Program-made: the position numbers and the translations under genes
Assembly: GCF_902459465.1 (NCBI RefSeq)
Contig: NC_047062.1
Span: 30,690,001 to 30,754,000 of the forward strand
Length of the DNA: 64,000 bases
Direction of reading: 5' to 3'
Origin: Asterias rubens
Taxonomy: Eukaryota
Shown: positions 3,499 through 35,430 of the stretch, one piece after another
Layout: the number at the start of each line of letters is the position of its first letter
Numbering within the stretch: the stretch's first letter is position 1
The notes under the pieces: model-generated
What the model was told of the DNA's origin: nothing
The model's input: only the letters and a program-made list of their open reading frames with translations
The model's database searches: none

Positions 3499-3729
3499 GA
3501 GAATACTGGTATGATAAGACTTTGATGCAATTTTTATTGACCTGTGAAATGTACAATATTTGTGTAGGTCCAGCCCCGAAGGAGTGGGTTAAATCTGATT
3601 TGAAAAGGAGCAAAGGGAAGAACATATTTTTTATCAGTATTATTATAGTTCCAAATACTCACATATCTGCCCACAACATGGCGTCTGGTAACAGTAAACA
3701 TAAATGTAATAAATATAGCAATTATACCG

Positions 3730-4045: not shown

Positions 4046-4869
4046 GGTGTTTTGATTAAGTCGGGATCTCGACACTACTTCATTATTTAGATTTTTAATT
4101 ATCTGCCACTTGGCTTTGGCAGATTGTTTCTTGCAATACCGTAAACGAAAACTTGTAACTTGATTGAATCTATGAAAATATGAATTTGAAATTTAAATCT
4201 AAATGTTCGCATAAAACCCACAAAGAAATGGATCTAGCATCTTAAAAGGAAAAGGATACTCCGTTGAATTTTTGTAATCAAGTAGATATTTACAATAAAA
4301 GTAACCTGTGAACATTTCTTTTCAAAAAGATGATATATGTATGTATATCTTTTTTGAGATATCGCAGTCCCGTCAAAATAAAAAGAGCCATACAAGAGGT
4401 CAAAAAGGGTGGTAGTAAAGGTCACAAAGGGTCATTGTAAAGGTCACATAGGGTCCCTGAAAGATACAAAGACTTATTGTTGGGACCCATACTAAACATT
4501 AGGTACAGATGTAAATACAATTTGTATTTACAAATATTTCTGGCATTTTGCGTGGGCAGTAAGCAAAAGTAGTTGGTTTTTTGTTGTTTTTTAAACTCGT
4601 TCTAATAAAAATGAGAATAACTTTGGTCTTTCACCAAAAAATTTAGCATTGCAACTTTGAAAAGTGTACCAACAGTCTCTTAGAAATCAACAAAAGTTAG
4701 GTCTTAGCCTAAACTTATGTTGAATGTAACGAAAAGTTAAAACGGATCAAGAAAATTGTCATAGTCCGTGAATAATTGTCACAAATTTTGTTACCAGACC
4801 ATCAATATTTTTTTCCCCACAGTAGAAATGTGTAAGATTTGTTGCCCTTCTTTGATGTATGTAATCATA

Positions 4870-5280
4870 AAAGAAATGCCGCTCATCGTACTAATAGACT
4901 GGTCCCCTGTCCTTAGGATAAGGACATGTATTGGCTTTGTATGTATACACATGTACGTCAAATTTAACTGCGAATATCAAGAACCATGAACCATGTAAAA
5001 TGATGCGAGGGCAAAGGTGATTATGTAGTGGGCTCAACGGCAGATCTCTGGCGTTTTTTATTATGTAGGTATGCATACAAAAAATGCTATCGCCCTGATA
5101 GACTGGTCCCCTGTCCTTAGGATAAAGACATGTGTTTGCTTTATATGTACACATGTACAGTGTATACACATGTGCATGTACGTCTGTTTTAACTGCGAAT
5201 CTCCAGATGAAAGCCATGTGAAATGATGCGAGGGCAAAGGCGATTATGTACGTGGGCTCAACGGCAGATCTGTGGCGTAA
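4870..5280. repeat. ~205-bp tandem duplication (2 diverged copies) ending at a ...TGACGTCAGATGTTCAGGCTA element end
   Basis: ATAGACTGGTCCCCTGTCCTTAGGATA and ATGATGCGAGGGCAAAGG...GGGCTCAACGGCAGATCT each occur twice. Confidence 0.85.
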
Positions 5281-6069
5281 TTCACGAGCCTCGAAGTGTG
5301 ACGTCAGATGTTCAGGCTACGGTCCTGACGGTTATTGCACTGTCTAGTTCGGCTCTTGACTAGTTTTTGTATCATTAGATATAGTGTAATGAAACCAAGG
5401 ATGCCTCATAAGTAAAGTCAATCACAATAGCCACAAGCCTGAGGAAACCTGTTTGCGAAAGTATAAACGAAGAGGAGTACGAATCATGATGCAGTTATAC
5501 CATAGAGTCAGGACCACTCGATGGTTATACCAACGGTGTGTGTTTGGCTACCAGTTTATGCCACTCGGTGCCAAGAAATTAATCACTTACTTTTAGTTGT
5601 TATATGAAAAACGTCTGCTGTAAACGATGACACACACAAACAGAAAAGTTTTCCCCGCCTTCCAAACTAAAACATCTCGTTGCCATAACACTTAACCCAT
5701 CCCCATTACTTCACATTAAGTGTAGGCGCCATTGTTTGCACAACCCTCCCAAGGTTGAGCCCTCCCATAGGCGGATATCATCCGGTCACGTGTCTTTCGT
5801 CCAATTAGGGAACGCCTAATATGCTGATATACTTTCGATAGCGCGGTTATGGAGGGATGTACCCTTTTCCGGTCTACTGGTATCCTGTAAAAGAAAACGG
5901 TTGTTTACTACAAAGTTTTTACTAAAAATATAAATGAAAGATGTTGGGAAATGCGTCAATTGATGAGCTTGTTATGATTCACCCCAAAAATAGACCGTAC
6001 TAGCCCAACTCTGTTTGGCTGAGGTGCGCCGTTGCACACTCAGGCAAGAATTACATTGCACTACTTTTA

Positions 6070-6340
6070 GGCTGTGTTCACCCCCGTCGTGTAGACACCA
6101 TTCGTGTATATTTCTTGCAGTTCTGGTCCATGTTGTTCCTGTAAACCCTGATGTCCCTGTATAAACCCTGATGTCATCTCCATCTCAATCTTCTTCTCTG
6201 TCTACATCTTTTCTTTTCCCTGTCCCGGTGGTTGTCAATCCATAATTCCCGTTGTCCATCTGTTGCCATTTCTTCGGGCAGTGTGTCCAGCCCACCTCCA
6301 TTTTAGCCAGGTTCATTGTCCTAACACTGCACAACCCTTT
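6070..6340 (-). mobile_element. RTE-clade LINE 3' fragment (decayed)
   Basis: The minus frame reads KWRWAGHTARRNGNRWTTGIMD*QP, matching the RTE/BovB ORF C-terminal motif WxWAGHxxRxxxxRW...W.P; it contains stops. Confidence 0.75.
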
Positions 6341-7485
6341 GCTTATTAGAGATACCACATTATTGTTGTTATGTAACTGGAGTCACGGTGTTGACATTTC
6401 TTTTAGTGTGTCTCTCCTGAGGGAGTCTCAGCTTGGTTAACGATGATGTGTGTACACCGTCAGTCCATTTGTTCAAGTTCTCTTGTTTTATCCCACTCTC
6501 TTAATGTCCGAGTGGTGTCAGTTTCGTTATTTTTGGGAGTGAAAGTCAATCTGTGTCGCTCTTTTTGAGTGAAATTTGAACAAACTTCACACTAAATCGA
6601 GTTGAAAGTACCCGTCTTTCACTCTTTAAAGAGTTGTACGCCATATGGCTCTTTGCAATAGTGGTATGGCGGAAACGAGTGGTTTTTCACTCTTTTACAT
6701 TTAGAGAGCAAAGATACGTGATATAATATAATAATATTAAGTCTTATATCTACCAGCAAGGTACTCAAGGCGCTTAGTATATAATATACATTTTTACAGA
6801 AAGAGAGGTTATTGAAGTTATGATTTCTGAGACCTAATTATGTAGCACTTAGGTGCTATAAGGCGCATACAGCAGACACATCCAGAAACACCGGGGCAAA
6901 CCCCTTCTCTTTTCGATAAAGTGCACTCTGTGGACGAAGCATTAATGTTTTAGTGTCTTGCTTATGAGGACACAAGTGCCACGACTGGGACTCGAACTTA
7001 ACCCACAATCCGATGCAATTGTTACATCATTTAGACCGATAGGCCTACATTGAAGGCCGAAAGTACTGATGCTAAACACACATCGGTGTAAGTGTTTAAA
7101 CAAAAATATATATATAATTTTTTATTCTCGATGCAAATTTAAAATCTATTAAACCATTGTTGTACCCGCTGCTAAAACCTAGGATTCGAACTGCCTCTAA
7201 GCTAGCGTCCAATCTCGGTGGTCAAGTTCGTATGACACTGCTCTAGAAATAGAATTGCAAAGGTCGTTGGTTCGAATCCCACCCGAGTAATATGCCTGTT
7301 ATTTTTTTTCACAACTCGGGAAAGTACTGAGTACATGTATACAGTGCTAACACACATGAATTTTGTGTAAGGGTGAACAAAACAAAATAAATATCTTTAT
7401 CCGCGATGCAAATTTAACATCTATTGTGGTTTATATTGATATCTATTTAAAAAGGCCGAAATGTTCGTGTTTGAATATACACCTT

Positions 7486-7656
7486 GGGTGGATTTCACAA
7501 AGGTAGTCCTAACTTAGGACTAGTCCTAGGCAAGGCTAAGAGATAGGACCAGTCCTAAGTTAGGATGAGTTACTGGTCCTAACTTAGGACTGGTCCTATC
7601 TCTTAGTATTGCCTAGGACTAGTCCTAAGTTAGGACTACCTTTGTGAAATCCACCC
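7486..7656. mobile_element. Near-perfect 171-bp palindromic MITE (same Harbinger-like family)
   Basis: GGGTGGATTTCACAAAGGTAGTCCTAACTTAGG...CCTAAGTTAGGACTACCTTTGTGAAATCCACCC; arms of about 80 bp with few mismatches. Confidence 0.85.
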
Positions 7657-8866
7657 GATCGTGTTTTTTCTGCCTTAGACATCAACAAATGTTTACAAAA
7701 CAAGCTGTCATTTGGTTCACTGTTACTCACTTGTTTATTTATTTGGATTTCTGTTTAATGTTTACTTTGGAGGAAAGAAATATCCCACAATTTGGAATCT
7801 GGTTACGCCGCGAAGAGCTGATACGCGCACGATTGCGGATGTTAGGCCTAATTAAATTTTCCTGGAAGCCATTTTGTTTTTTTCCGGGTATGAAAATATG
7901 ACGTTCCACCAATTCCGCATTTTTGTTATGATTGCATTAAACCTCACAAACGAAACGTCATGCCTTTAACTTTTTGTTTTGCGTTTATACAATAGTTCCC
8001 TTTTGGTAGTTGTTTGCGACAGGTAGTTCTATTTTCTCAATCAGTATTTCGTCGGATGTGTTTGTTTTGTAACGTTATTGTGGAGTTTTAATAACTGACA
8101 CTCGTTGACTTGTAATTGTGTATGACCACAGAAGTTGTTTTTAAAAACGTGCATACATTTCGTATGAAACATTTGCTGAGATGTTTTTTTCTTCAATCAT
8201 CTGAGCGAAACCCTCAACCATGATTCAAATGGTTTGAGCATGTGCTCCTGTGTGTTAACACAAACCAAATTATCATTTTCGCTCTTCGTACGTTAAGTTC
8301 AAGAAAGAAAGTTACTTCACTTCAATCCAGCCGATTATTCAAAACACAAAGCGAAGAAAAAACTATCTTAAAGGCACTGGACACGTTTGGCAAAGACCAG
8401 TCTTCTCACTCGGAGTACCCCTTCATAAATGCATGAAATAACTAACATGTGAGCATTGGCTCAACTGGTCTTCAAAGTTGCAAGAAAATAATGAATGCAA
8501 AAACACCCTTGTGTGCTTTCAGACGCCTGGGAAAGGCTTCAGGCCTGAAGTCTTTCTGAGATTGTTATGTCAGTGAGAAATTATCTCTTTCTCAAAAACT
8601 ATACGTCAGAGGGAGTCGTGTCTCACAATGTCTTATCAACAGCTCTTCGGTGCTCGTTTTTCACAAAGATAGTCCTAACTTAGGCCTATGTCCTAGGAGT
8701 TAATCAAAGCTTAAGGCTGGTCCAAAGTTAGGAGGAGTCACTCGTCCTGACTCGAGATACCACTTTGTGAAATCCATCCCAGTGCCTTTTAACTGGTATC
8801 CAAGTCAAAATGCATGAAGTTATAGACGTAGAGATGGGAAAGATATTGTTTGACCTGTATGAACCC

Positions 8867-9049
8867 TAGACTTGGTTCAAGTCCCGTTCTCGTGTGAGAG
8901 GTCCGTCATAAGCATATCGCGCCTATATAGCAAACAACCCGTATAGTGCGAGCTCGCCGTCAAAATCATGGTCCCGAGAATAAGTTGGAAATGCAGATCA
9001 TCATAAGTTTTCTGGCTATGGTGCGAAATCGGGACTTGAGTCAAGTCTA
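8867..9049. mobile_element. 183-bp TIR element, TAG..CTA termini, 9-bp TSD
   Basis: TATGAACCC-TAGACTTGGTTCAAGTCCCG...CGGGACTTGAGTCAAGTCTA-TATGAACCC. A second copy lies at 23900-24068 and a solo end at ~31765-31785. Confidence 0.85.
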
Positions 9050-9283
9050 TATGAACCCCGGATACAGTCAGCCACTGTTGAGTTTAGAGACAACGAACTT
9101 TACTGGCTTGAACACTCTGCCAATATTAAAATTTCACTTCAAGCAACACTCATCAACGTGCCAAGTCATGTGAGGCTTTGTCATCGCAAAAACAAAAGAC
9201 AACCCCGGCTGTTGTTGCTGTTTAAAATTCATTGCGGTTTATTTTTTTGGGGGGACACCAATTTTGAAGAAAAAAAACTGCGA

Positions 9284-9492
9284 GGGAATCCCGGAAGGAT
9301 GCGTTAGTCACATCTATCAGAGGACAATCCCCAAACCGCAGAACTGAGTCACTGTACCACAGATTCCAAGCAAATATAAACAGGAGGCAAATCCTGAACC
9401 CTGGCAGAACTTTAGAACTCGGACAGTGCGACGCTTCGGTTTGGTGAAGAGATCAACTTGAGCGGAACTTCCAGCTGCACTTTTTTAAATTG
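9284..9492 (+). promoter_or_regulatory. Putative core promoter and non-coding first exon of the ATF3-like gene
   Basis: kB-like GGGAATCCC at 9284, ETS core CCGGAAG at 9291, AP-1-like TTAGTCA at 9304, perfect AP-1 TGAGTCA at 9345-9351, TATAAA at 9375-9380, donor TTG|GTAAGT at 9493. The next acceptor is at 11305, 20 nt before the ATG. Confidence 0.55.
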
Positions 9493-9730
9493 GTAAGTTG
9501 ATTGTTATTATGGTAAAGGAATCGGTATAGGCTTATACTTGCAACATTAATTCTTTAAGTTACTTCAGGATACCATGCACTTGTGTTTAATAGTGACTAC
9601 TTGTCAATTAAATTGGTAAGTTGATTGTTATTATGGTAAAGGAATAGGTATAGGCTTATAATTGCAACATTAATTCTTTAAGTCACTTCGGGATACCATG
9701 CACTTGTGTTTAATAGTGACTACTTGTCAA
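9485..9730 (+). repeat. 123-bp tandem duplication (2 copies) including the ATF3 exon-1 splice donor
   Basis: Units 9485-9607 and 9608-9730 are nearly identical; GTAAGT occurs at 9493 and 9616. Confidence 0.95.
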
Positions 9731-11325
9731 AAGTTTTCGAACTTCGTACCCAATTGCCTTCCTCCATGTTCGTATTATGCATAACTTTCTGACCGCTAGT
9801 CTAGCTAAAACTTGGCGACATGTTATACAGTTATGGACACTATTCTTAATTGCTCAAAACAATTGTTAGCATACAAAACTACTTGGTGAGAAAGGCTCCC
9901 TCTGAAGAGTAGTGCGGTTTTTGAGAAACAGGTTATTTCTCACACAAATAATAAAATATTTCAGCTGAAGCCTTTTATTATGCATCTGAAAGCTCACAAA
10001 GTTGGGCAACAAGGTGTTTTTTTTCTTTCATTTCTCTTGCAACTCTGATGACCATTGAGCAAAAATGTTCACATTTTTTTTTTTTTTGCATATGATGGGA
10101 TAAATCAATTGAGAATACTGGTCTTGACAATTGCCAAACGTGTCCAGTGCCTTCAAAAAGATACCAAAAATAGAATCAAAATTTACAACATGTTATGATG
10201 TTAAAATGCCATCAAATCCTTCCAATACAATTACATTGGTGATAACACCGTGTGGTGTTGAATCTCTCCGGTTTATGTGACAACACCAATGCTGTCGAAT
10301 TCTAACACCCCATGTTTTTTTGCAGTGAAGGCTTTAATAAGCAATTTCAGATGTGTCATGTACAAACAAAACGTATTGGTTTGGGAAGTTATTGCATTAG
10401 AAAGAACAACAGATCGATTATGCAGGTTGCATTCAGGGCCAGGTAGCGGGTTACACAAAGTTCGGCAAACGTGAACTCGCACACTGATGTCAATGTAGAC
10501 CTTGTCTTTACCCGCAAGGATGGAGGCAGGTACTGGTCTTATCAATCCCAATGATTTATTGGATGAATAAACGTGCAGTGACGTAGAAGTTGTCCATATC
10601 TGCGTTTTGATTGGTCCAAGTTGATCTCATTCACTGATGTCAACGTAGATCGGTCCCTTGGACAGGTACTTGCTTTTCAGAATCAGTGATCAAATTGAAT
10701 AATATGATCATTTAATTGGATAATTGGCAGTGACGTAAGCATTTTGTATCTGTGTTTTGATTGGTCCGCCGAGGTGACGTTTGACAGCAACACTTGGGGT
10801 CGTCTGCTCATGATGAATCTAAGTGAAAAGTGAAGATGACCTACGCTAGAGGCCACTCTCTGGCGTTATGCACGAGTTTTGAAGCGTCAGATGTTCTGTC
10901 TATAATGTCAATGTACCTTTATAATGATGCCCTCTACATGCTATTGTCTATTTCCGGAATCCAAAAACCCTTAATATGTTTTGCAGACGTGATTTGTTTA
11001 ACATGGCCCCGGGAGGTCACTTAAAGGTTTGTGTAGTCTTCATTGCCGACACTGTTTTTTTGTATACTAGTCCTCGATAGAGGGCGCGGCATCAACTGTT
11101 TTGGAGACTGACTCGGAGGGACTGTCAAGTCTATGAACTTAGCTCGATCATTTTGATCTAGATGTTTGTGTGATACAGATATCTCTGCTCCAGTAATTCA
11201 TGTTAAACATCTATTATTTGTTAAAAAAAGATTCGTAAAAAATAATGAGTGTACACTTTCATCAACAAAGTGACGTCAAACAAATCATGTTTAATTTTCT
11301 TTCAGGAGATAGCATTGAAACTAAC

Positions 11326-13358
11326 ATGGAGCGAATTGTCATGCCTGGCGACGAGCTTTGGGATCCGGCTGGCGGCTTTGACTTGACCGCCAACGGCTTG
11401 ACCACCCTCAATAATGGCTTCGACCCCGTGAGCCCGCCACCCCAGCAAAATAACACTGAGACCGATGCGGAGTTCATGCATCGTACAATGCTACGGGAGG
11501 AGTTGAGGGTTAATATACTACAGAGGAGATTGCAAAAAGGTCTCGGGGCGGTCCAGCTTGACTGGAGGTTCACCAAGCCTGAAAATGTAAGGAAAAGTGC
11601 CGCAACATATAAAAAAAAACCACACACCTAAGCACATGTTGTTTTGGTCTTGTTTTGCGTCTACCGCCAAAACTCATGACTAATGTTCCCTCTTGAAGTA
11701 TTATTTCAAAAAGCGGTGGACGTATTATTAATTTATTTAGAATCTAAACCGCACTGCATTTTTAAAAAGGAAGAAACTAAAACAGAACCAACACTCCCAC
11801 AAAGAAAACTTACATATGGATGTACCCGAAAGTTTAATATGTTTGTTTTCTGAATTTTTTCGACGTGAGGATTTTTTTTGTTTCCAAGAGCTACAATCTA
11901 TTATGTTAAAACACCATGTTACGTGAACTTGCTGAATGTCTGTTTTGATGTCCCACTGCCCCTAATATATGTTGGGAAATGGCATTGGTCTATGTCAAAT
12001 AAGTGTAAAGGCTGTTTGTTATTTTTGCAAGAAATAAACAAATTCTTTGATCGGACATGCATCAAATTGTTCCAGAGACCTTTCCTTAAACTTTACCTGG
12101 TTACACTATTGATAGAAGTTGAATTTACAGGGGAAATCATAATTTGATATTCTTTTCCGGAATTTGTCTTTTTCAGCTGACACCAGAAGAGGAAGATCGA
12201 AGAAAACTTCGCCGAGAGAGGAACAGAGTTGCTGCCTCAAGATGCAGGGAGAAACGACGAGAGAGGACGTATGTTCTTGTCAAGGTGAGCCTATAACACC
12301 CAATTCAGACAGGCGCTCCAGGAGTCGCGCCGAACCAAAATCTGAATTAATTACATGAAAAGTTTGACGTCCTCTGAAACAGTTTTAGGAGCGACTGGAC
12401 GCGCTAGCAGTCGGTCGCAACGACTCTGGAGCGACTTCGTTTTAGACGTCAATCATGTCATGAATAGAGCCAATGTAAATGTTATGTTAAGTTTGTCAAG
12501 GCTTTCGTGGGGGTATCTGGGACGGGAGACCACGCACGCGAGTAGCGAAGCCATTCGCTTGGGATCGCGGGCCTCAAAGGCACGAAGACGTTGAGAAAAG
12601 GCTCACCTAGCCTGAGAATTAGCAGTGGTTTCAGCAGCACATTGACACAATTCGCCACTTCAAGGACAAACTTCTTCACTTTATTTCCAATATATAAAAT
12701 TGTAATCGTAAGTGCACTCAAAATGCTTGGTAAAGCGCTACGAAATGGCCGTGTTTTTTTTTCAGGATGCCTGGTGCATCGAAGGACATACACTCATGGT
12801 TGGTTTTATGAGTACCCTTCGTTGCGGGTTACCACGAGAAACCGTGAGAAACCGCGAACACATGACGATTACTACATACTATACATGTAGCCTTTTGGAG
12901 ATACGAGGACACTTTAGAAGTGACTGTTTTGTGTGGGTTGTATACAAATTATATCGACAAAGTGGGTTGTGAAAATAATATAAACTACAGTCTTCTCCTT
13001 CTCCTGAAGGAGAGCAGAGCCTCCTGGTAAAGACGAGCAGAGTATACTGTTCGAAACGTCGAGACCAAACCGGCTCTTTTCAGAGCCAACACTCACCCTA
13101 TAAGAGATTTACACATAGTTATACCCGCAAGTTTACTATTTATTTATAGTTTTTTCTTACAGTCTTTATGCCTCGCTCTTATCATTGCAGGAGACCGACC
13201 AACTTGAAACCAGCAATCAGGAATTAATCCGAGAGATACAACAATTAGAAACGGAGCGCCAGGAACTTGTGGCAATCCTGTCCTCCCATCAGCAGACGTG
13301 TGGCTGCAGCCCTCCCGTACCCAACCCTAGTCTAGATGACCTCCACATTGACCCATGA
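11326..13358 (+). CDS. ATF3: ATF3/JDP2-like (Fos-family) bZIP transcription factor, 178 aa
   Basis: Exons 11326-11586, 12177-12284 and 13191-13358, both introns phase 0. It has the N-terminal LREELRVNILQRR motif, the basic region LTPEEEDRRKLRRERNRVAASRCREKRRERT, and a zipper ETDQLETSNQELIREIQQLETERQELVAILSSHQQTC ending in the Fos/ATF3-type HxxxC. Length and the K|E intron position resemble ATF3. Confidence 0.85.
12999..13140 (+). mobile_element. Penelope-like pLTR remnant with a degenerate minimal hammerhead ribozyme motif
   Basis: GAGCAG-AGTATA-CTGTTC stem, then GAAAC-GTC-GAGA, with TCTC-CTGAAG upstream. The downstream GAGACCAAACCGGCTCTT..CAGAGCCAAC is shared with 35225-35430. The Penelope assignment is inferred from the motif. 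Confidence 0.6.
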
Positions 13359-16300
13359 ACATAAATCTTCACATTTTGTTTTTGTAAAATAATATTTGTA
13401 AATTTTGAAACGCAGTTGTGACTGAAACATATCACACTGCAATGATGTATATTAATTTCAACTTGTACAGTTTTATAAATAAAGAATATGTTTCAGTGTA
13501 TGTGCACCTTAGCCAGGAATTCTGATTATTTCTTTTGTAAATGTAGTTGTGTATCCTATTTTTCACATTATGTGGGGGGGGGGGGGGGGCGATTCGGAGT
13601 TCCATGTTACGTACCAGCGCAAACGTACCAGCGCTATGAAATGGCAATCGCGCAGTAAGCACAACTTAGGCCGCTAAGCAGCTCTATGAAACTGGGCCTT
13701 GGTCATCAGAAAACAACAAATAACAATATTCTAGAGTTATTAGAATGTTTTATTGTTATGAGTCAAGGATGTGTGACTAATTTATATGGGTTGGGGTTTA
13801 AATGTTGAGTACGGTGAAGAACGCCATATACATAAATAGCTGTAAAGCCGTCGTCAATATGCTATAGCAGTGGTTTCAATACGCCTCTCTTAATATTCAT
13901 GCATGACGTCATAACTCTTACCCAGGGAGGCTAACGGCGCACGTCTGCCACCACTTTACTTGCAGTGGCTGCACCTATGGCCTCGTTTCTGTTAGAATTG
14001 TGAAGTACTCCATGCATAAATCTTAAGAGAGGCGTATAATAGAACCCTTCCCATGAAATTATGTAAACCGCACATTGCGCTTGCGCACCAACAATGCCGG
14101 GGGCCAATTTCATAGAGCAAACAATCGCTTATTTTAAACATGTTACTGACTAAAATTTCATGCCATACCCATTGCTTGTGACTAGTATTTAGCTGTTGTT
14201 TACTTGGCATAACAATTGAGTGATGTCTTGGCCGGTAATCTGATTTTACTAAGCAAGGATTTGTTTGCTTAAGCAAAATTTTGTGCAGCTCTATGAAACT
14301 GGGCCCTGGTTTGCAAAGGGAGGGAACAGTTTTTTCTTCTTCTTCCTTACAAGTGCTGCTTCATAAGTGGACATTATACCGTGCCATCCGAATTGGTGGC
14401 TACAGCTACGGCTACGGCTGTTGCTAAGGGTGTTGCTAAGGACGTCCTATACTTCAACGCATGATGACGCGGAAATCTAGCCGTAGCCGGAGCTTCAGCC
14501 GCCTATATGTTTTTAAATAAACCATAAACCAAATATTCGGACACGGGCTCTGCCTACGTGTGTTTGCCAGCCAAGTGGCTGTGCGCGTGCGCGAATGTAA
14601 TTAGCATTTTTTTAGGGTGGGGCAAATTACAAATCCCCATGTGAAATCACAGCAGCTTGACTGTCTCAGCACACTATAGTCATGAAATCTTCAAAACAAA
14701 GATAGGAATTATAACGGTATAAACCCTTTTCACATTACAAAGCCAATTCCCGGGATGATGAGACCCCTGGAAATCCCCGGGGTGTTTTAACCCTACGGCT
14801 TGCCTTACCTTAAGTTTGTTTCACCTTGATGCATTTTTTTTACTGTGAAGAAAAAACACAAGCAAGTGGTATTTTTTGCCCGGGAAATGGCTATTACCCA
14901 GGAGTTTACCGGGTCAGCAATTGTGAAAGGGTTAGCTACATTTTTTTGTCATGGGAATTCCCTGGGAATCTCTGGTGTGAAAGGCTTTTAGTGCAGGCCT
15001 TTTCGAGACACCCAAGTTTCATCACCTAAAATCAACCCTCGAAAGCGACTTGTTGAACTATGTTGTTGAGACTGCACCTTCATTCAATCCCCACTGCTGC
15101 AGGCCAAGTAAACAAAATAACAGTTGATCGTCCAGGTTTGTACACAAAAGAGGAGGATGTTTTGTTTTATTTCTCTTTACGGGTGGCCACCAAGCCTTTT
15201 AATTCGAACTATGACCACCAATTCTTCAGTTTAAAATCCACCACTTAATTTATGTAGTTATGTAAGTTCTTAAAAGATTTGCAAGTTGTGCACAGACAAT
15301 TTGCCTTTTTGAAAACAAAATGTAAAGAAGAAAAAGAAAAAAAGATGTGGTCTTAACAAAAGATGAGGGATTGACGACCAACTGGTATTTCTTTGTATTT
15401 GGCCTTATGGTAAAAACCTTCTAGTGAATAAACACTCTTTGCGTAGGTGTTCATCAGACTGCAATAATGCAATTTCTAGTTGTTTACGTAAACCCTTGGT
15501 AGAAAAAAAATAGTACCCTCTACATACAATTCAACAGACCAAAAGGGCCATTGTGGTAACAATAGAAGTCGGTTGGCATTACCATATAAATAGCTTCATG
15601 TTCATGGTCTTCAAATTTTCAATAAAAGAATTCTTTCTGACTGCTGGCACTACTGGCTTAAAAAAAACCACCCTATTGGTTTTTGGCATAGAGCTTGGTG
15701 TGGGTGTGTCATATTATACTTGGTGAACATTTGGACTTGTTGCTTATTCCATTCGACAGAAAGCTGTTTCATCTGTTATTCGGAAGCTCTCCTCAACAAC
15801 TTGGTAGGTATACAGAGAATGTCAACTGTGTGTTTTCATATCAAGCTATGGTTTTGGATTCATGCCATATTTATGTTTTTTGTGTGATAGTTTATCCAAA
15901 GAAATTGAAGTTTTGTGTGCATGCAGGGTCTTGAACAAGACTTGTAAATAAATTGACAAAAGTGGCGTCTACGTGGGAAACGCTTGGCAATCACATTACA
16001 CGGTTCTTCATTTTTGTTTTCGATATCAAGCTTTGAGACGCCCTTCGGTGGATAAGGCCTTATTATATAAAAAACGATTATTATTGTTATTAAGTAGGCA
16101 TAATCAATCAATCTAGCAAAGATCATAATATTTGTGTTATAAACAAATGTTTGATAATAACTCTTAAAATGAAATGCAAAACAAACTTCTGGTTGCAAGT
16201 CGAAACATCCTTATAAGGTGCTACATAATTGGGTCTCAGAATTCATAACTTCAATAACTTCAAAAGACAGGTCTTTTATTCAGCTGCGCCACGCATCTGG

Positions 16301-29202: not shown

Positions 29203-29928
29203 TTAAGATATTTTTGGCATCTGCCAATCAATGGATATTAACCATTTCTTATACATGTAGCCGTGCCTTAATTACAGCCATTTTGTATCTGATAAATTAA
29301 ACTTCTCTCGTTTGTTTTTTTATCGAACATGTGATATTGGCATTCATTACCCGTATGTTGTTGCATCATAACCCGTATCTACACGACGTGTACGTTTAAA
29401 GGCGCTGGGCACCTTTGGTAATTGTCAAAGGCCAGTCTTCTCACTTGGTGTATCTCTACATACGCATCAAATAACAACCCTGTGAAAATTTGAGCTCAAT
29501 TGCTCATCGAAGTTGCAAGAAAATAATAAAAGACTTCAGCTGAAGTATATTTACTTAAGTGAGAAGTTGCCTCTTTCTCAAAAACTAGGTACTTCCGAGG
29601 GAGCCGTTTGCTTTCCATTGCTCGTTACCATAGTGTTCAGTGCATTTAAAATACAAGGGACATACGTACACCACTTGCTCTATACATACAAATACTAATT
29701 AATTTTATCGCCACAGTTATTGTAACATTACTGATGCTCGGACATAATTTATACAACAAAACTGACCTATATACAACCATGGAGGAAATTTATTCCTCCG
29801 TGATACAACACTACAGTACTGTACACGTGAGTGGGGTTTAGTATCCTCCCCCTTCAAGAAAATAAACAAATGGTTCGATAAGCCTTCATTAAATAGCACC
29901 CCTCAAAAAAACCCCGCAACAAACACCC

Positions 29929-29976
29929 CAACAAACAAACAAACAAACAAACAAACAAACAAACAAACAAACAAAC
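29929..29976. repeat. (AAAC)n microsatellite
   Basis: About 12 perfect units. Confidence 0.95.
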
Positions 29977-30281
29977 ACCCAAATGCATTGTTCTCCCATA
30001 ACATATGCCAGCTCAAAGCACCTGATCGGAACTAGTCAGTGATGGATATCTTCCATGACGGACGGGCCAGTGAATTGAAAAGCTAACTGGTCCTGCTGGC
30101 CAGGCAGTCACATGCAAAAAGTTAAATGCCGTTAAGTGCAGTGTTATGTCTTTTACTCTGCTTGTCCCCGCCCCACTTGACCCCCCCCCCCCAATGGAAA
30201 CGGCTGGTTACGCCCATGATCGTTTTTAAGTTTCTGATTGCAAAATGAGTCAATACCATCTCTTGGACCTGCATGCATGTT

Positions 30282-33200
30282 TTACTGAATTGAACAAACT
30301 GTGCTTTTATTCTGTTCCAGGGCTGTAGGAAGGTTGGATTTCTTGTTTCGATGTAGTCGGTCGATCACCTGTAATAAAAGAAACGAACAAGACTTTGATT
30401 TCCCCACATATTTTAAAGCAAAAATTCATAAAAAAGCACAAGAAAACAAGCGTCCAAAGCCATGTAGAAATAATAATAAATAGTAATTTATATTTCTCTC
30501 CAGGACCAGTCTGTTCGAGGGTGAAGACTTTCAGGGGTCAGGGTTACAGAACTTATGTACAAGAGGGGAAGAGTGTGTACAATCTTTTTGAACACCCTCT
30601 ACCACATATCTGCCATGTTGTATTAGGGCTACAATCCCCGCCAAAATGCATGGGCCACCCATTTCCAACGTTACATAAAACCACTCCATGTCCTCTTCCC
30701 ATGACAAGAAAACTCCCTCCCCGCTCAACGTTGACTGGAACGCAGAAGACCGTGCAATCCCTACCAGCATTGAAAGGGGGCAGGGGGCCCAACGAGATAT
30801 TCCTCAGTTGGTAAAGCGCCGGCACGATAATCCGGAGGTCGTTGGTTCGAATCCCACTCTAGTCAATTCTTTGCTCAACCCCCAAATCATGTTATGTTTT
30901 ACATACCGCAAGGCACTCCATGAAGTCCAGGTCACTGGATCCATCAGCGTCTATTTGTTTGACGATATCTCTAACCTGCTGCTTGGTGAACAGTAAACTG
31001 CTACTCTCCAAGATTCGGTCCAGCTCATCTGCATCGATTGTCTATTTATAGAAAATAATTATTTAAAAGGGAAAAATGATTATAATGGGATTTGGACCAA
31101 CAACTCAATGACAATATATTTGTTTTGAAAATGAGAATTCCCTGAAGACTATAAGAACATTTACCAATTTACCGCAAGTTTCTCAGTCGTTTACCGGAAA
31201 TTCCTCACTCATTATTACATCGAGTCATGTTTCTCACTATTTTACTTCAAGTTCATCATCACTTTTTTACCCCAAGTTCCTAACTCGCTTACCTCAACTC
31301 GCCACACAGTCACTTCAAATTCCTCTTTATAATTAAAAGTGCACTTTGTGCTTTGGACAATCAAGTTTACCGTCGGAAATAATTACAGTGCATCTTATGT
31401 TTTAACTTACCCCATCTTTATTGGAGTCAGCTTGTACAAACTTCTTCTCAGCGACAAGCAGGACAGACAGCTTCAGGTCGGGATAGGTCTGGGCGATCTC
31501 CTATGGATTTCATACACACCAAGGAATAGTCAGTTAAAATCTGTATTAAACATGGCCAATGTGGCATAGGGTATCCCCCAATAGTCCACTACCTCAAAGG
31601 CACTGGATATGTTTGGTCACTTGTCAAAGTCCAATATTCTATTATCACTTGGTGTATGGTGTATTCCCAAGTGTAAGGCCGACAGGGTTAAGGTTTTGGA
31701 TGCCGGCTGCGCAAATGTTTTCTGACGTAAGGCGATGTGACTGAAAACAAAATGACTCTCATTTGGGACTTGAGTCAAGTCTACGTTACGTAAAAATATT
31801 CACCACTTCTTCACTCTATAATAATATTCCTTAGAGGGCGCTCATACCTCATAGTACTTGTACGTATCTTTCTTTTCCGCTTCCTTTGCCACTTCGACCT
31901 TAATTTCCACAGGAGGTTTGAGACCCTTTCTCGGCTTCTGTCTTGGGTTGGCATGCTTGGCTGTCTTGGGACGAACTTTGCGGCCGTTCTGTTTACCAAG
32001 TAAAGATAGGACAAAATAGCTGTAAGACATTTAGAACTGCACAGGTTTTGGTGTCAGGCCACTTCTAACATTTCGTACCCGTGTGTCGATTTCACGAAGA
32101 GTTAGGACTAGTCCTTTAGGACTATAGTCCTGAGAGATATTAAAACTTAAGGCTAGTCCTTAAGTACATGTAGTACGATTAATTCGTCCTTACTCGAGAT
32201 AAGACTTATAGTCATAACTCTTTATGAAATCCACCCGGGGTCGATTTCACAAAAGATAGTACACTGTACTAAACTTTGGACTAGTCTAAGGAGCTATTCA
32301 AAACCTAAGGGTAATCCTAAGTTTGGATAGGGAGCAAATATTCTGTATATTATTGCTCCATGGTTAGGATGAGTTACTCGTCTTATCTCTTTGTGAAATC
32401 CACCCCTGACCACTTATGTATTACTTGAAAGACAATGATGAAGTGATAACAATAGATTATTCATTTCGAACCAGCCATTTTGTTTTCTTACTTTAGGTGT
32501 TGAGACTGGCGTGTTGCCTGCTGCTGGGCTAGCGGATGGAGCTTGTATCTTATCTTTGGTTTCTGATTTTGAACCCTTCCCCTTCAACGCTTTCAGCTGA
32601 AAATGTAATTAATAAAGAAATCACATAATTATAATGGTAATTATATACTATAACTTATAAGCATTTAAAACTGTGTTAATATGCATGCAAATTGATTTTT
32701 ATTGAAACTTACATGAATGTTAAAATCAACAACAAACGCATATAAATGTTTTATGTGTTTTTCTCACAAGATCAAAAACACGTTCGAAGCATTGCATTGC
32801 ATTACATTAATTTCAATACGCGTAATTTTTGGAGGGGGGGGGCGTGCAATAGGTTTGAGACAGAATTTCTTGAATTAATCTTGAATTGAAGTTCATGAAG
32901 CAAAGACATTTGTTTGCAGTTGTATTCATAAAGGTATATCTTTTGGGAAGTTTTCAAATGCAATACAAGTTTCTACAACGGTGTGATTTTGTAGTGCATT
33001 CTCAGTCAGTCAGTTGTATTTGACTCAATCGTGGTTTGAACAAGAAACTTGACGATTTTCAAAAGGCCTTTACACAAAATTGAGTCACGAAGTTTAATCC
33101 AATAATAATAGCTACATTTTCCCGTGTATATAACAGAGCAAAGTGTTGTGCAACATAGTATGTATCAGTTGCTACTCAAAAATCACCATTTATTTTTGCT

Positions 33201-33845
33201 ACTCAATTAGCATTCTGTGTGCACAAAATCTGCTATGCAAAAGTGCTGATGAAATCATTCGATGAGAAACTATTCATTATTTTTATATGCAGAAATTACA
33301 GCAAAATCGTATTGCCATTGATTAGTTATCAAATGTAAATACATATCAGATGACCAGTGCGATAGTAATATTTGTATAACGGTGACAGGTTCTGTGTTGC
33401 TATGGGTTTGTACGCAAAAAAACTAGTCCCTATTTATTTACATTGACTGCACGTACGTCTAATAACATAATGGGAAAGGTTTTTAAAAACGCCTCCATCA
33501 AAAAAAATTAAAACAAATTATACAATGTGATTTTATCATAAGTGGGCTTTTCGACATTTTGAAGAGGATTTATGTTATTAGATGTCCCTACCGGCGCCCG
33601 CGATTGTATCAATATCAATATAAAACAATAATAAATTGTTATACCTCCGTCTCCAATTTGTCAATTTTCTGGTAAAGTTCGAAAGATGTACTCATGGCAC
33701 TATTTAGGGCCTTTTCTTTCTCATCCAATGCAGTTTTCAACGCTTCCTTGTCTCTTAGTAAAAGAACGAACTCCGAGGTTTTCTGTGTGCGTGTTTGGTC
33801 CCCACCCTCCGGGGCTTCGGTGCCATTTCCCCCGGTATCAGCCAT
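30282..33845 (-). CDS. Uncharacterised coiled-coil / two-EF-hand protein with C-terminal CaaX (CSIQ), about 252 aa
   Basis: Six minus-strand exons: 33845-33645, 32596-32492, 31988-31848, 31500-31411, 31041-30907 and 30368-30282. All introns are GT-AG and phase 0, with no stops in the joined frame. EF loops are DSNKDGTIDADE (split by an intron) and DADGSSDLDFME. The protein ends ...EQNKSTVCSIQ*. The start ATG (AGGATGG) has an in-frame stop upstream, but a further 5' exon is not excluded. Confidence 0.85.
30786..30880 (+). mobile_element. tRNA-derived SINE head; second copy at ~57608-57690 (-)
   Basis: CTCAGTTGGTAAAGCG...GGTTCGAATCCCACTCTAGTCAATT; the acceptor stem does not pair. Confidence 0.65.
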
Positions 33846-34010
33846 CCTGAGCTCTGGTGGTCACCGAATACAATGTAGTCCGGTTTCGTAGGAGTTTCTC
33901 TAAACCGGTTCCAATCGACTTTTCCTAATGTGTCCGAAACGGAATGTGTACTTTTAGAAGACCTTTTTCGGCAATCCTCAAAGTTCAATTCCCTTTTCTC
34001 TCTTGTGTCA

Positions 34011-34330
34011 TTGATATTCCGCTGGTGTCACTGATGTTCCTCTGGCGTAACTGATGTACCTCCTGTGTTACTGATGTTCCTTTAGTGTCATTGGTAATTC
34101 ATTGTTGTGTCGCGGCTGATATTCATGGTGTCACGATGCTCCACTGGTGTCACTGCTGTTCCTCTGGTGTCACTGATGCTCCACTGGTGTCACTGCTGTT
34201 CCTCTTGTGTCACTGATGTTCCTCTTGTGTCACTGATATTCCTGGTGTCACTGATGTTCCTCTTGTGTCACTGATGTCCCTTTGGTGTCATTTGTGTTCC
34301 TTTGGTGTATGTAGATGTTCCCCTGGTTTC
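34011..34330. repeat. 20-bp minisatellite (CTGGTGTCACTGATGTTCCT-like) upstream of the EF-hand gene ATG
   Basis: Roughly 15 degenerate head-to-tail units. Confidence 0.9.
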
Positions 34331-35224
34331 ACGCGGTGCTGTTATGCCTTTCCTATTGAAATACCCATTAGATACCTCACCACAGATTTTCGATGAGTCG
34401 GCTTTCGACTTTGAATGAGCCGGATAATGCTTTGTTATTCGCCTTCTCAGTAAATAGTCGCCAATCGATGAACTGTGTATCAACAATCAATGAGTTCTGA
34501 ATGCATTCTGTTACAATCGCTGGACGGTAGAACTTTGTCATCCTCCTGGAATGATCGTTTACATGCGTGGTGTGACGTTTATTTAGTTGCTATCATGTTT
34601 GTTGGTAGCTACAATAATGCATGGGGATCATCCAGCTTGAGATTTTGTTTGCTCACTTGCCTTGTGAGTCTTTGTGGTTTTGTCACGGCTGTGTGAATGG
34701 CAGATTTGGTTGGCCTATCTTTGCCTTGTATTTGCATAACAAGAGGACGGGAGTTTGCGTTGACAGAAGTCTCATGAATAATTATATTAAATCCCGGCAA
34801 TAAACAGCTATTAAAAGTGCTATTGTACACAACTCTGTTCAGTAAAGTTTCTCTTTTGTTGATCAGAGACTCTGTGCATCGAACCGGACCCTATATATAA
34901 AAGGAAGGGGGGGGCACTGGGCGGGTTTTTAGGTGGGTCTGCTTTAGGGTTGAGTGAGCATGGTGTCCTTGCTCTGGGTTGAGTGACCCTCATGTAACCA
35001 CGGGGAAAGAAATTGTTCAACTCTGTTCTCGGTAAAGTTTCCCTTCTGTTAGAAGACTCGATCTGTGCATTGATCCAGACACTAATTAGTGATGGGCACC
35101 CACAGGGCTGGTTTCTAGGCTTGTGTTAGGGTACAGCGATGAGCATGCTCTGAGCATCTGCATCCTGAGTTGAGTAACCCTCTCGTCATCCCCATCTTAA
35201 GGAATGAAACAAGATGGTAGGGTA

Positions 35225-35430
35225 AAATCTCTTTTGAGATGAGGTGTTAGCTCCGAGAAGAGCCGCTTTGGACTCAACGTTTCGAACCTTCTCGACTGCT
35301 CGTCTTCAGGAGAAAGAGTAGAGTATAATTGTTGAATAGAGACCAAACCGGCTCTTCTCAGAGCCAACAATCCTCCCAGGAGATTTATGGATATATCCGA
35401 AAATTTACTAGATATTCAACTATTTTAAAC
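35225..35430. mobile_element. Penelope-like pLTR remnants in inverted arrangement; hammerhead-like core on the minus strand (35273-35313)
   Basis: The minus strand reads CTC-CTGAAGA-C-GAGCAG...TTC-GAAAC-GTT-GAG. The plus-strand 35338-35430 matches 13061-13140. Confidence 0.6.

What the first reader, a model, noticed from the sequence alone, without database searches (positions are those of the whole stretch)
30282..33845. Hidden 6-exon gene: coiled coil + basic linker + EF-hand pair + farnesylation signal
Seen: four of its six exons are absent from the ORF track. The exons join cleanly, all in phase 0, into ~252 aa. The protein has a heptad-rich N-terminus (LRDKEALKTALDEKEKALNSAMSTSFELYQKIDKLETELKALK), a K/R-rich linker (NGRKVRPKTAKHANPRQKPRKGLK), EF loops DSNKDGTIDADE and DADGSSDLDFME, and a terminal CSIQ. 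Established: D/N-x-D-G-x-I-x-x-x-E loops bind Ca2+, and CaaX with X=Q is a farnesyltransferase substrate. Inference: a membrane-anchored, possibly oligomeric Ca2+ sensor of a family I cannot name. The segment LDEKEKALNSAMSTSFELY loosely echoes the CC1-box of TRAK/HAP1/BICD dynein adaptors but lacks the AAxxG core, so that link is weak.
Basis: partly seen in the sequence, partly recalled or inferred. Interest (0 to 1): 0.7.

Follow-up and report, generated by a model that had tools for sequence, protein, structure and literature searches.

The report
Conserved farnesyl-tailed EF-hand calcium sensor gene
This is a real, spliced and expressed starfish gene, already annotated as "uncharacterized", for a small protein with a coiled coil, a basic linker, one calcium-binding EF-hand pair and a lipid-attachment signal kept from placozoans to amphioxus, and nobody has studied its function.

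Summary
Six minus-strand exons (33845-30282) join through five GT..AG, phase-0 introns into 252 aa. All five junctions appear in spliced contigs from three public runs. The genome holds no intronless copy.

The gene is not hidden. Its product is identical to NCBI "uncharacterized protein LOC117298627 [Asterias rubens]".

It belongs to a single-copy, vertically inherited metazoan family. I found members in all four echinoderm classes sampled, hemichordates, amphioxus, cnidarians and Trichoplax, plus fold-level hits in a further cnidarian-like entry and one whose accession prefix I read as scallop. Four intron positions are shared with sea urchin, jellyfish and Trichoplax.

All four modules are conserved:
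- a heptad coiled coil;
- a disordered polybasic linker;
- one calmodulin-lobe-like EF-hand pair with canonical loops;
- a fixed-length tail ending C-a-a-Q in 26 of 26 aligned sequences.

Pfam recognises only the EF-hand. No characterised family matches the whole architecture. One 2022 paper lists the sea-urchin ortholog among conserved genes of unknown function.

Best reading: a farnesylated, probably dimeric, tethered Ca2+ sensor. Ca2+ binding, farnesylation, oligomerisation and location remain untested. The dynein-adaptor (CC1-box) link is rejected.

The parts
33846..34164 (-). 5' UTR, part of exon 1. It is colinear with the genome and may extend to about 34522. It contains a 20-bp tandem repeat.
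   Evidence: X3 contig record 19 covers 33645-34164 without a gap. X2 contigs reach 34522. An in-frame stop lies upstream of the ATG, and there are 7 short uORF ATGs. The tandem repeat spans 34000-34332.
33645..33845 (-). Exon 1 coding part, aa 1-67. It holds a disordered N-terminus and most of the coiled-coil helix (aa 17-77). The ATG at 33845 is in a good Kozak context (A at -3, G at +4).
   Evidence: AF2 predicts a helix at 17-77 with pLDDT about 90. Heptad periodicity is shown. Junction 33645|32596 is seen in X1, X2 and X3.
32492..32596 (-). Exon 2, aa 68-102. It holds the end of the coiled coil and a Ser/Pro/Ala-rich disordered linker. This is the least conserved exon, and it is missing in Trichoplax and in one Saccoglossus isoform.
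31848..31988 (-). Exon 3, aa 103-149. It holds the polybasic cluster (31920-31988; 11 K/R in 25 residues) and the start of the extra helix that precedes the EF-hand pair (DTYKYY motif).
   Evidence: The basic cluster is kept in every lineage, with 9-15 K/R in the densest 25-residue window (in Ptychodera that window lies in the coiled coil).
31411..31500 (-). Exon 4, aa 150-179. It holds the entering helix of EF-hand 1 and the first half of loop 1 (DSNKDG, 31411-31428).
   Evidence: The intron inside loop 1, after the Gly, is at the same position in sea urchin, jellyfish and Trichoplax.
30907..31041 (-). Exon 5, aa 180-224. It holds the second half of loop 1 (TIDADE, 31024-31041), the exiting helix, and EF-hand 2 with loop DADGSSDLDFME (30916-30951).
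   Evidence: The invariant residues are D174, G179, I181, D182, E185, D210, D212, D218 and E221.
30282..30368 (-). Exon 6, aa 225-252 plus the stop. It holds the end of the last EF helix, a conserved tail of near-fixed length, the CaaX box CSIQ (30285-30296) and the stop codon (30282-30284).
   Evidence: Junction 30368|30907 is seen in X1, X2 and X3. X1 record 3 runs across it into the 3' UTR.
29770..30281 (-). 3' UTR, about 0.5 kb. The end is approximate. The only minus-strand AATAAA is at 29794-29789. An (AACA)15 microsatellite lies inside at 29918-29977.
Evidence: X3 record 13 covers 30036-30369, and X1 record 3 covers 30213-30366. X3 depth continues through the 29668-30035 bins.

Best explanation
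This is a real, single-copy, expressed gene of Asterias rubens (RefSeq LOC117298627). It encodes a 252-aa member of an ancient, uncharacterised metazoan protein family.

The protein has five parts:
1. A helix of about 60 residues with a clean heptad pattern, which most likely forms a coiled-coil dimer or oligomer.
2. A disordered linker of about 55 residues carrying a conserved polybasic cluster.
3. A single calmodulin-lobe or troponin-C-N-domain-like EF-hand pair, preceded by an extra helix. Both of its loops carry the full set of Ca2+ ligands.
4. A conserved tail of near-constant length.
5. An invariant C-a-a-Q box at the C-terminus, a farnesyltransferase-type signal.

Most likely mechanism (inferred): the protein is farnesylated on Cys249, then processed and carboxymethylated. 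Two or more chains held by the coiled coil present several farnesyls and basic linkers to an acidic membrane or to a farnesyl-binding partner. The EF-hand pair opens on Ca2+ binding and engages or releases a target there. In short, it would be a tethered Ca2+ sensor or adaptor.

Shown here: the gene structure, splicing, expression, conservation of every module, the fold class and the lack of any characterised relative.
Inferred: Ca2+ binding, farnesylation, oligomerisation, membrane location and the target.
For: Gene:
- All five junctions appear in three runs.
- There is no other copy in the genome.
- The joined protein is identical to NCBI P0011.
- 7 of the 8 listed exonic differences in a relative are synonymous.

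Family:
- Searches found full-length ortholog P0003.
- Searches found 22 to 32 proteins in asteroids, crinoids, echinoids, ophiuroids, hemichordates, Branchiostoma, Trichoplax, Rhopilema and Actinia.
- An AlphaFold DB cluster search gave two full-length look-alikes of 224 and 240 aa at 31-34% identity. From memory of UniProt accession prefixes I read one as cnidarian-like and one as scallop.
- The tree follows the species tree with one copy per species.
- Intron positions are shared with sea urchin, jellyfish and Trichoplax.

EF-hand:
- Pfam EF-hand_7 scores 35.9 bits against a cut-off of 30.
- Loop ligands are invariant.
- VIA-align gives Z 13.2, rmsd 2.1 A over 81 residues to calmodulin. Troponin C alignments also cover the extra N-helix.

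CaaX:
- 26 of 26 sequences end C-[SVTAL]-[IVL]-Q.
- CVIQ, the exact ending of six members, was the best of the tested substrates of a recombinant farnesyltransferase and a poor one for geranylgeranyltransferase I. The enzymes were from Arabidopsis (PMC3017772).
- The genome has three loci with prenyltransferase beta-subunit repeats.

Coiled coil:
- AF2 predicts a helix at 17-77 with pLDDT about 90.
- The 3.5-residue periodicity is reached by 0 of 2000 shuffles.

Polybasic cluster: it is present in all lineages.
Against: - No experiment on any family member was found. Paper searches returned only a list entry.
- The homodimer prediction of residues 15-80 gave no verdict.
- The coiled-coil core has Lys at two a/d positions (33 and 43) and polar residues near 54. 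The partner could therefore be another protein rather than a second copy.
- Position 6 of EF loop 2 is not Gly in most members. This may lower affinity.
- The polybasic cluster lies about 125 residues from the CaaX box, unlike the adjacent polybasic-farnesyl signals of K-Ras4B. There is also no second Cys for palmitoylation: the protein has only C222 and C249. A single farnesyl alone gives only weak membrane affinity, which is established knowledge.
- The run types were guessed by the tool, and tissue is unknown.
Confidence: 0.6

Rival explanations
1. Nuclear-envelope or nuclear reading. The basic cluster would be a nuclear localisation signal. Together with the farnesyl it would route the protein to the inner nuclear membrane, as in lamins, making a Ca2+ sensor at the nuclear envelope. 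Without prenylation the protein would be nucleoplasmic, as described for the plant calmodulin CaM53.
For: The basic clusters in several lineages look like classical mono- or bipartite NLSs: KKRR...KRPAQKKR in anthozoan-clade sequences, PKKRRHPKKRRKKK in amphioxus and KRRAGKKKK in Trichoplax. The cluster is far from the CaaX box, as in lamins (own knowledge). CaM53 cycles between plasma membrane and nucleus (PMC7216078).
Against: The A. rubens cluster itself fits the strict K-K/R-x-K/R pattern poorly. I ran no NLS predictor and have no localisation data. Basic disordered stretches also bind acidic lipids, microtubules and nucleic acids.
Confidence: 0.13
2. Farnesyl as a protein-protein handle. 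The lipid would dock into a partner or a prenyl-binding chaperone rather than into a bilayer. Examples are PDE6-delta-type delivery to cilia, or a Spindly/RZZ-type interaction. The protein would then be a Ca2+-regulated adaptor in cilia, flagella or the mitotic apparatus.
For: - X = Q is invariant, as in the farnesylated coiled-coil proteins Spindly, CENP-E and CENP-F (own knowledge).
- It is a farnesyl-only protein with no adjacent second membrane signal.
- The conserved LP...S-x-[VI]-C tail of near-fixed length suggests recognition of more than the lipid.
- As a group, the 14 sea-urchin genes of unknown function that include the ortholog peak at 18-24 h post-fertilisation and are higher in testes and coelomocytes (PMC9552553).
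- The family profile's top PDB hit is flagellar radial spoke protein 7, though it scores no better than troponin C.
Against: The expression statement in the paper is for the group, not this gene, and the supplement values were not held. No CC1 box or Spindly motif is present. The coiled coil of about 55 residues is far too short for a dynein-activating adaptor (own knowledge). The radial-spoke hit is generic EF-hand similarity.
Confidence: 0.12
3. Constitutive light-chain-like subunit. The EF-hand pair would bind a helix of a partner permanently, as myosin light chains or centrin-Sfi1 do. It would not act as a Ca2+ switch, and Ca2+ or Mg2+ would be structural only.
For: Single EF-hand lobes often act as permanent subunits (own knowledge). 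The closest folds include apo-calmodulin/IQ complexes and centrins. Loop 2 lacks the usual Gly at position 6.
Against: All ligand positions of both loops are conserved over the whole family, including both position-12 Glu residues. That conservation is not expected if Ca2+ binding were dispensable.
Confidence: 0.1
4. Gene-model artefact or pseudogene. The exons would join by chance, or the locus would be non-functional.
For: None was found beyond the short length of the exons.
Against: - Spliced contigs occur in three runs.
- The product is identical to the RefSeq model.
- Orthologs occur in at least five phyla with conserved intron positions.
- Differences in a relative are mostly synonymous.
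Confidence: 0.01

Closest known systems
Calmodulin / troponin C / centrin (CTER EF-hand proteins), single lobe
   Same: It has a canonical helix-loop-helix pair with 12-residue loops. The best structural matches are the calmodulin N-lobe (Z 13.2, rmsd 2.1 A, 81 residues, 26% identity), troponin C N-domains including their extra N-helix, and centrins. The best sequence matches in the PDB are the same families.
   Different: It has only one EF-hand pair instead of two lobes. It adds an N-terminal coiled coil, a polybasic linker and a C-terminal CaaQ box. Identity is only about 20-28%, which is generic EF-hand level.
Plant prenylated calmodulins (petunia CaM53, rice CaM61)
   Same: Both are EF-hand Ca2+ sensors carrying a polybasic stretch and a C-terminal CaaX box. 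Prenylation there decides between membrane and nucleus (PMC7216078; PMC3886798 abstract). This is the closest functional analogue.
   Different: Those are full four-EF-hand calmodulins with the basic domain directly next to the CaaX box. CaM61 ends CVIL (a geranylgeranyl signal). They have no coiled coil, they are plant proteins, and there is no specific sequence relationship.
Neuronal calcium sensors (recoverin type, Ca2+-myristoyl switch)
   Same: Both are lipid-anchored EF-hand sensors in animals. The hydrophobic EF-hand cleft can hide the lipid (own knowledge).
   Different: Those carry an N-terminal myristoyl rather than a C-terminal farnesyl, have four EF-hands and have no coiled coil. 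An N-terminal MG is not conserved in this family.
EFhd1/EFhd2 (swiprosin) and AIF-1
   Same: Each has one EF-hand pair plus, in EFhd, a coiled coil for dimerisation. EFhd structures appear among the fold matches (ranks 10 and 39). There is a weak Pfam AIF-1 hit in 8 of 10 members.
   Different: The AIF-1 score is 15-17 bits against a cut-off of 50. The domain order is reversed, with the coiled coil C-terminal in EFhd. Those proteins have no CaaX box.
CRACR2A/Rab46, Rab11FIP3, ninein-type EF-hand dynein adaptors; Spindly
   Same: They combine an EF-hand pair, a coiled coil and, in CRACR2A and Spindly, a prenyl group (own knowledge).
   Different: There is no CC1 box (AAxxG) and no Spindly motif in any member. 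The coiled coil is about 55 residues rather than several hundred. There is no Rab domain, and Pfam gives no hit.

Membership tests
EF-hand superfamily (Pfam PF13499 EF-hand_7 / PF00036) | Profile score above the curated cut-off | tested here: met
   P0011 scores 35.9 bits on EF-hand_7 (cut-off 30) and 27.2 bits on EF-hand_1 (cut-off 25.4). All 10 scanned members hit both families at E <= 0.1.
EF-hand superfamily (Pfam PF13499 EF-hand_7 / PF00036) | 12-residue loops with oxygen ligands at positions 1, 3, 5, 9 and a bidentate Glu at 12 | tested here: met
   Loop 1 is DSNKDGTIDADE and loop 2 is DADGSSDLDFME. D174, G179, I181, D182, E185, D210, D212, D218 and E221 are invariant. Loop 2 position 6 is usually not Gly.
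EF-hand superfamily (Pfam PF13499 EF-hand_7 / PF00036) | Paired helix-loop-helix fold | tested here: met
   The AF2 domain model has mean pLDDT 70. Its best match is calmodulin at Z 13.2, rmsd 2.1 A over 81 residues.
EF-hand superfamily (Pfam PF13499 EF-hand_7 / PF00036) | Actual Ca2+ binding | not testable with these tools
   This needs ITC, 45Ca overlay or spectroscopy.
CaaX farnesyltransferase substrates | Cys at position -4 from the C-terminus, an aliphatic a2 residue, and X = S/M/Q/A/C | tested here: met
   The protein ends CSIQ. 26 of 26 aligned members end C-[SVTAL]-[IVL]-Q. CVIQ is an excellent substrate for farnesyltransferase and a poor one for geranylgeranyltransferase I in vitro (PMC3017772).
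CaaX farnesyltransferase substrates | The enzyme is present in the organism | tested here: inconclusive
   Three loci carry prenyltransferase beta-subunit repeats (PF00432) above the cut-off. I did not resolve which one is the farnesyltransferase beta subunit.
CaaX farnesyltransferase substrates | Demonstrated lipid modification | not testable with these tools
   This needs metabolic labelling or mass spectrometry.
Calmodulin / troponin C proper | Four EF-hands in two lobes, about 150 aa | tested here: not met
   There is only one pair, at aa 160-235. The rest is coiled coil and disorder.
AIF-1 / EFhd family (PF21008) | Profile score above the curated cut-off of 50 bits | tested here: not met
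   The scores are 15.4 bits for P0011 and 17.3 bits for P0003.
Dynein-activating adaptors (BICD / HAP1 / TRAK / Spindly type) | A CC1 box (AAxxG) or Spindly motif, and a coiled coil of more than 200 residues | tested here: not met
   The alignment of 14 to 27 members shows no AAxxG in the coiled coil. The helix spans only residues 17-77.
Neuronal calcium sensors | An N-terminal myristoylation signal (MGxxxS/T) and four EF-hands | tested here: not met
   N-termini vary (MADT, MTDT, MGDE, MSGG, METL and others), and there is one EF-hand pair only.

The most novel reading that the evidence does not exclude
A natural Ca2+-farnesyl switch. The protein's own EF-hand lobe would take up its own, or its coiled-coil partner's, C-terminal farnesyl in one Ca2+ state and release it in the other. 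Ca2+ would then move the protein on and off a membrane. This would be the C-terminal, farnesyl counterpart of the recoverin Ca2+-myristoyl switch, in an animal-wide family that vertebrates, as far as these searches reach, appear to lack.

Basis:
- Isolated calmodulin lobes bind farnesyl-cysteine in a Ca2+-dependent way and extract K-Ras4B from bilayers.
- The same intramolecular idea has been floated for plant CaM53 and built artificially (PMC7216078).
- Here the tail between the last EF helix and the Cys is of near-constant length and conserved.

Nothing tested here speaks directly for or against it.
Probability: 0.15. Interest if true: 0.8.

Novelty: new variant of a known kind. Interest (0 to 1): 0.5.

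Why it matters
Lipid-anchored EF-hand sensors known in animals are N-myristoylated, as in the NCS family and calcineurin B. To my knowledge and in the searches run here, a C-terminally farnesylated EF-hand protein has been described only in plants.

This family keeps a coiled coil, a basic linker, an EF-hand pair and a CaaQ box as one unit. It does so with conserved introns and as a single copy, across placozoans, cnidarians, echinoderms, hemichordates, amphioxus and probably molluscs. That degree of constraint points to a basic cell-biological role that model organisms would have missed, because no vertebrate, fly or nematode member turned up.

The prediction is concrete and cheap to test in sea urchin, starfish or Nematostella embryos. 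It could also yield a natural Ca2+-controlled membrane-tethering module.

The gene itself is already in RefSeq, so what is new is the reading of the family, not the gene.

Tried and rejected
- **Dimer prediction.** Complex prediction on residues 15-80 with two copies gave no verdict (score 0.26, mark 0.32). It is not evidence either way.
- **Exon-by-exon Pfam.** Only exon 5 gave sub-threshold EF-hand hits. The full-length scan was needed.
- **Exhaustive representative search.** It could only be run on exon 1 (67 aa), because a spliced protein has no reference. It found 7 hits, all echinoderm-like by similarity to named members, one of them full-length. No exhaustive search was therefore run with the whole protein. 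Absence from vertebrates, arthropods and nematodes rests on the word-seeded searches and on fold clusters, and is provisional.
- **Protein-atlas look-alikes.** For the whole protein the best score was 0.90, a generic EF-hand cluster. A chordate 'CCD48/EFCC1' cluster at 0.77 was not backed by Pfam. For the N-terminal half all scores were <= 0.80, which is noise level.
- **Fold searches.** The PDB, AlphaFold DB clusters, Swiss-Prot models and ESM Atlas gave only calmodulin, troponin C, centrin or generic EF-hand matches beyond the family itself.
- **Radial spoke protein 7.** It topped the profile-versus-PDB search but scored the same as troponin C (51.3 against 51.2 bits). I rejected it as a specific relative.
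- **CC1 box and Spindly motif.** I inspected the alignments by eye and found neither.
- **Paper supplement.** The expression values for the sea-urchin ortholog were not held.
- **The look-up of encoding contigs for the amphioxus protein.** It was not on record.
- **tRNA calls.** ARAGORN and Rfam gave no tRNA call for the tRNA-like repeat in intron 5.
- I did not type the spliced 252-aa sequence into any tool. The identical database protein P0011 was used instead.
Full report

Yes. On the minus strand, six exons join into a 759-nt reading frame of 252 codons plus a stop. Their coordinates are 33845-33645, 32596-32492, 31988-31848, 31500-31411, 31041-30907 and 30368-30282. Every exon length is a multiple of three, so all introns are phase 0. 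Every intron begins GT and ends AG behind a pyrimidine-rich tract.

The ATG has A at -3 and G at +4, and an in-frame stop lies upstream. With a 60-aa ORF cut-off, only exons 1 and 3 would appear in an ORF list. That explains 'four of six exons absent from the ORF track'.

**2. Is it expressed and spliced as proposed?**

Laying contigs of four public runs on 29300-34800 gave all five predicted junctions. These are 30368|30907, 31041|31411, 31500|31848, 31988|32492 and 32596|33645. Each has CT..AC ends on the + strand, and each appears in X1, X2 (a related organism) and X3.

One X2 contig of 852 nt runs from the 5' UTR through exon 5. X1 record 3 crosses the last junction into the 3' UTR, so the CSIQ exon is the one used.

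The run types were only guessed by the tool. However, a six-frame search of the whole 418-Mb genome finds nothing but these six exons. The spliced form therefore does not exist as DNA and must come from RNA. Intron contigs in X3 have depths of 3-11, against 330-560 for exon contigs. That fits pre-mRNA, although depth from contigs is only a rough guide.

The first exon continues colinearly upstream to at least 34164 (X3) and perhaps 34522 (X2). The only minus-strand AATAAA downstream is at 29794-29789. The mRNA is therefore about 1.6-2 kb.

Of the 8 listed exonic differences in the relative's contig, 7 are synonymous. The eighth (G6E) lies in the disordered N-terminus.

**3. What is it?**

An exhaustive HMMER search with exon 1 found a 259-aa full-length relative, P0003. 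Searches seeded with it and with two family alignments returned 17, 22 and 32 proteins.

One of them, P0011, is letter for letter the joined model. NCBI names it 'uncharacterized protein LOC117298627 [Asterias rubens]'. The window is therefore starfish, and the gene is already annotated.

Named members come from:
- Patiria, Acanthaster (asteroids);
- Anneissia, Antedon (crinoids);
- Strongylocentrotus, Lytechinus, Diadema (echinoids);
- Amphiura (ophiuroid);
- Saccoglossus, Ptychodera (hemichordates);
- Branchiostoma;
- Trichoplax;
- Rhopilema and Actinia (cnidarians).

All are 'uncharacterized', 'hypothetical' or 'EF-hand domain-containing'.

A fold search of AlphaFold DB clusters added two full-length look-alikes of 224 and 240 aa at 31-34% identity. 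I read their accession prefixes from memory as a hydrozoan and a scallop, and did not verify this.

No vertebrate, arthropod or nematode member appeared. Those searches are word-seeded, so this absence is provisional.

A maximum-likelihood tree of 27 sequences follows the species tree with one sequence per named species. Deuterostome classes fall on one side, and anthozoan and medusozoan clades plus Trichoplax on the other.

Mapping the sea-urchin, jellyfish and Trichoplax proteins onto their genomic loci shows shared intron positions:
- after the coiled coil;
- before the 'EIAxxYP' helix;
- inside EF loop 1, directly after the Gly;
- after 'ECLx'.

The gene structure therefore predates the cnidarian-bilaterian split. 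Exon 2, the Ser/Pro-rich part of the linker, is absent in Trichoplax and in one Saccoglossus isoform.

**4. Anatomy and conservation**

AlphaFold2 with the family alignment gives one long helix at 17-77 (pLDDT about 90), disorder at 78-133, five helices at 134-235 and a disordered tail.

(a) *Coiled coil.* Hydrophobic occupancy across the alignment has its strongest period at 3.5 residues, and 0 of 2000 shuffles reach it. F26, L30, L40, L47, F/Y55, L57 and L64 are fully hydrophobic. Lys sits at two core positions.

(b) *Linker.* Every lineage keeps a dense K/R cluster, 9-15 in the densest 25-residue window. The exact sequence is conserved only within Ambulacraria, as RPKTAKHAN-R-KP[RK]K.

(c) *EF-hand domain.* Only EF-hand families pass Pfam's cut-offs (EF-hand_7 at 35.9 bits against 30). 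Both loops keep their ligands and both position-12 Glu residues across the family.

A domain model (mean pLDDT 70) aligns best to calmodulin, at Z 13.2 and rmsd 2.1 A over 81 residues, then to troponin C N-domains and centrins. The extra helix at 134-154, with its invariant Tyr148 and nearly invariant DTY-YY motif in deuterostomes, corresponds to the N-helix of troponin C.

(d) *Tail.* From the last EF helix to the end the length is almost constant. L237, P238, S246, C249 and Q252 are invariant. All 26 aligned sequences end C-[SVTAL]-[IVL]-Q. One transcriptome-derived sequence (P0025) continues 8 residues past its CAIQ.

The protein has only two cysteines, C222 and C249. There is therefore no palmitoylation site next to the CaaX box.

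**5. How it most likely works**

Established knowledge: a C-terminal C-a-a-X with an aliphatic a2 residue and X = Q is a farnesyltransferase signal. In an in-vitro panel, CVIQ was the best farnesyltransferase substrate and a poor geranylgeranyltransferase-I substrate. CVIQ is the exact ending in Patiria, Acanthaster, S. purpuratus, Diadema, Trichoplax and Rhopilema. The enzymes in that panel were from Arabidopsis (PMC3017772). The starfish genome has three loci with prenyltransferase beta-subunit repeats.

Canonical EF loops of this kind bind Ca2+ and open a hydrophobic cleft.

I therefore commit, at about 0.6, to the following. The protein is farnesylated, held as a dimer or oligomer by its coiled coil, and tethered through several farnesyls plus basic linkers to a membrane or a farnesyl-binding partner. 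Its single EF-hand lobe responds to Ca2+ by binding or releasing a target.

Shown: gene, splicing, conservation and fold.
Inferred: modification, Ca2+ binding, oligomer, location and target.

Three rivals remain:
- a nuclear-envelope route, because the basic cluster looks like an NLS in several lineages and sits far from the CaaX box, as in lamins;
- a farnesyl used as a protein handle, cilia- or kinetochore-type;
- a constitutive light-chain-like subunit.

The most novel reading is an intramolecular Ca2+-farnesyl switch. Single calmodulin lobes bind farnesyl-cysteine Ca2+-dependently and pull K-Ras4B off bilayers. The same idea has been floated for plant CaM53 (PMC7216078). I have no direct evidence for it here.

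**6. Comparison with what is known**

The protein works like a lipid-anchored EF-hand sensor. It is a member of the EF-hand superfamily (profile, loops and fold all met). It is not a member of calmodulin or troponin C proper, because it has one lobe only.

It is also not AIF-1/EFhd (15-17 bits against a cut-off of 50). It is not a neuronal calcium sensor, because it has no conserved myristoylation signal. It is not a dynein-adaptor family member, because it has no AAxxG, no Spindly motif and a helix of about 60 residues.

The nearest functional analogue is the plant prenylated calmodulin, which differs in domain content, in the position of the basic stretch and in kingdom.

In the held literature, searches on twelve ortholog identifiers found a single paper. 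It lists the S. purpuratus ortholog LOC100891350 among 14 conserved echinoderm genes without known function. Its reciprocal best hit is in Nematostella (A7SDT1), and its only annotation is 'calcium ion binding' (PMC9552553).

**7. Verdict**

I rate it a new variant of a known kind, with moderate interest. The scan had noted this stretch only as the present finding.

Noticed in passing
window 34000-34332 (minus-strand 5' UTR of the gene): There is a 20-bp tandem repeat with 16.6 copies at 73% match (consensus unit starts CTCTGGTGTCAC...). It lies inside the transcribed 5' UTR, where X3 and X2 contigs cover it. The leader also carries 7 upstream ATGs with short ORFs of 4-12 codons. It could affect translation or be a polymorphic minisatellite.
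   Followed up: partly
window 30772-30955 (intron 5): This is a very high-copy repeat, with summed contig depth of 7,000-36,000 in all four runs. It carries a tRNA-like box-B/T-arm (GGTTCGAATCC). It looks like a tRNA-derived SINE, but ARAGORN and Rfam call no tRNA.
   Followed up: partly
window 32060-32427 (intron 2) and 29300-29667 (downstream of the gene): Two more high-copy repeats are present. Summed depths are about 1,600-16,000 and up to about 10^6, and many internal deletion joints appear in the contigs. The one in intron 2 shows copies with 70-270-nt internal skips, as in MITE-like families.
   Followed up: no
window 35224-35269 (-) and 35345-35390 (+): Two inverted copies of a histone 3' stem-loop-like element (GGCTCTTCTCAGAGCC core) lie here. 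Rfam RF00032 scores 31.9 and 21.5 bits, both under the gathering score of 34. They form a 31-nt inverted repeat 63 nt apart. No ORF of at least 70 aa lies next to them. They may be a relic of a convergent histone gene pair or a hairpin repeat.
   Followed up: partly
window 12165-12287 (+) versus L008:7462-8740 (-): The Trichoplax ortholog has a bZIP gene (Pfam bZIP_1/bZIP_Maf) convergent with it, 1.7 kb downstream. Its basic-region exon gives a weak tblastn hit (E 0.006, 46% over 41 aa) to the ATF3-like bZIP exon of this window. That exon is also convergent with the EF-hand gene, about 18 kb away. This may be ancient microsynteny or chance. The jellyfish locus has no bZIP within 6 kb.
   Followed up: partly
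window 29918-29977 (3' UTR): An (AACA)15 microsatellite lies inside the presumed 3' UTR. Contigs of all runs break there.
   Followed up: no
P0025 (transcriptome-derived family member): This member has CAIQ followed by 8 more residues (WFAYNTDQ) instead of a stop. It is the only sequence whose CaaX box is not terminal. It could be a sequencing or assembly error, a read-through call or a real loss of the signal.
   Followed up: no
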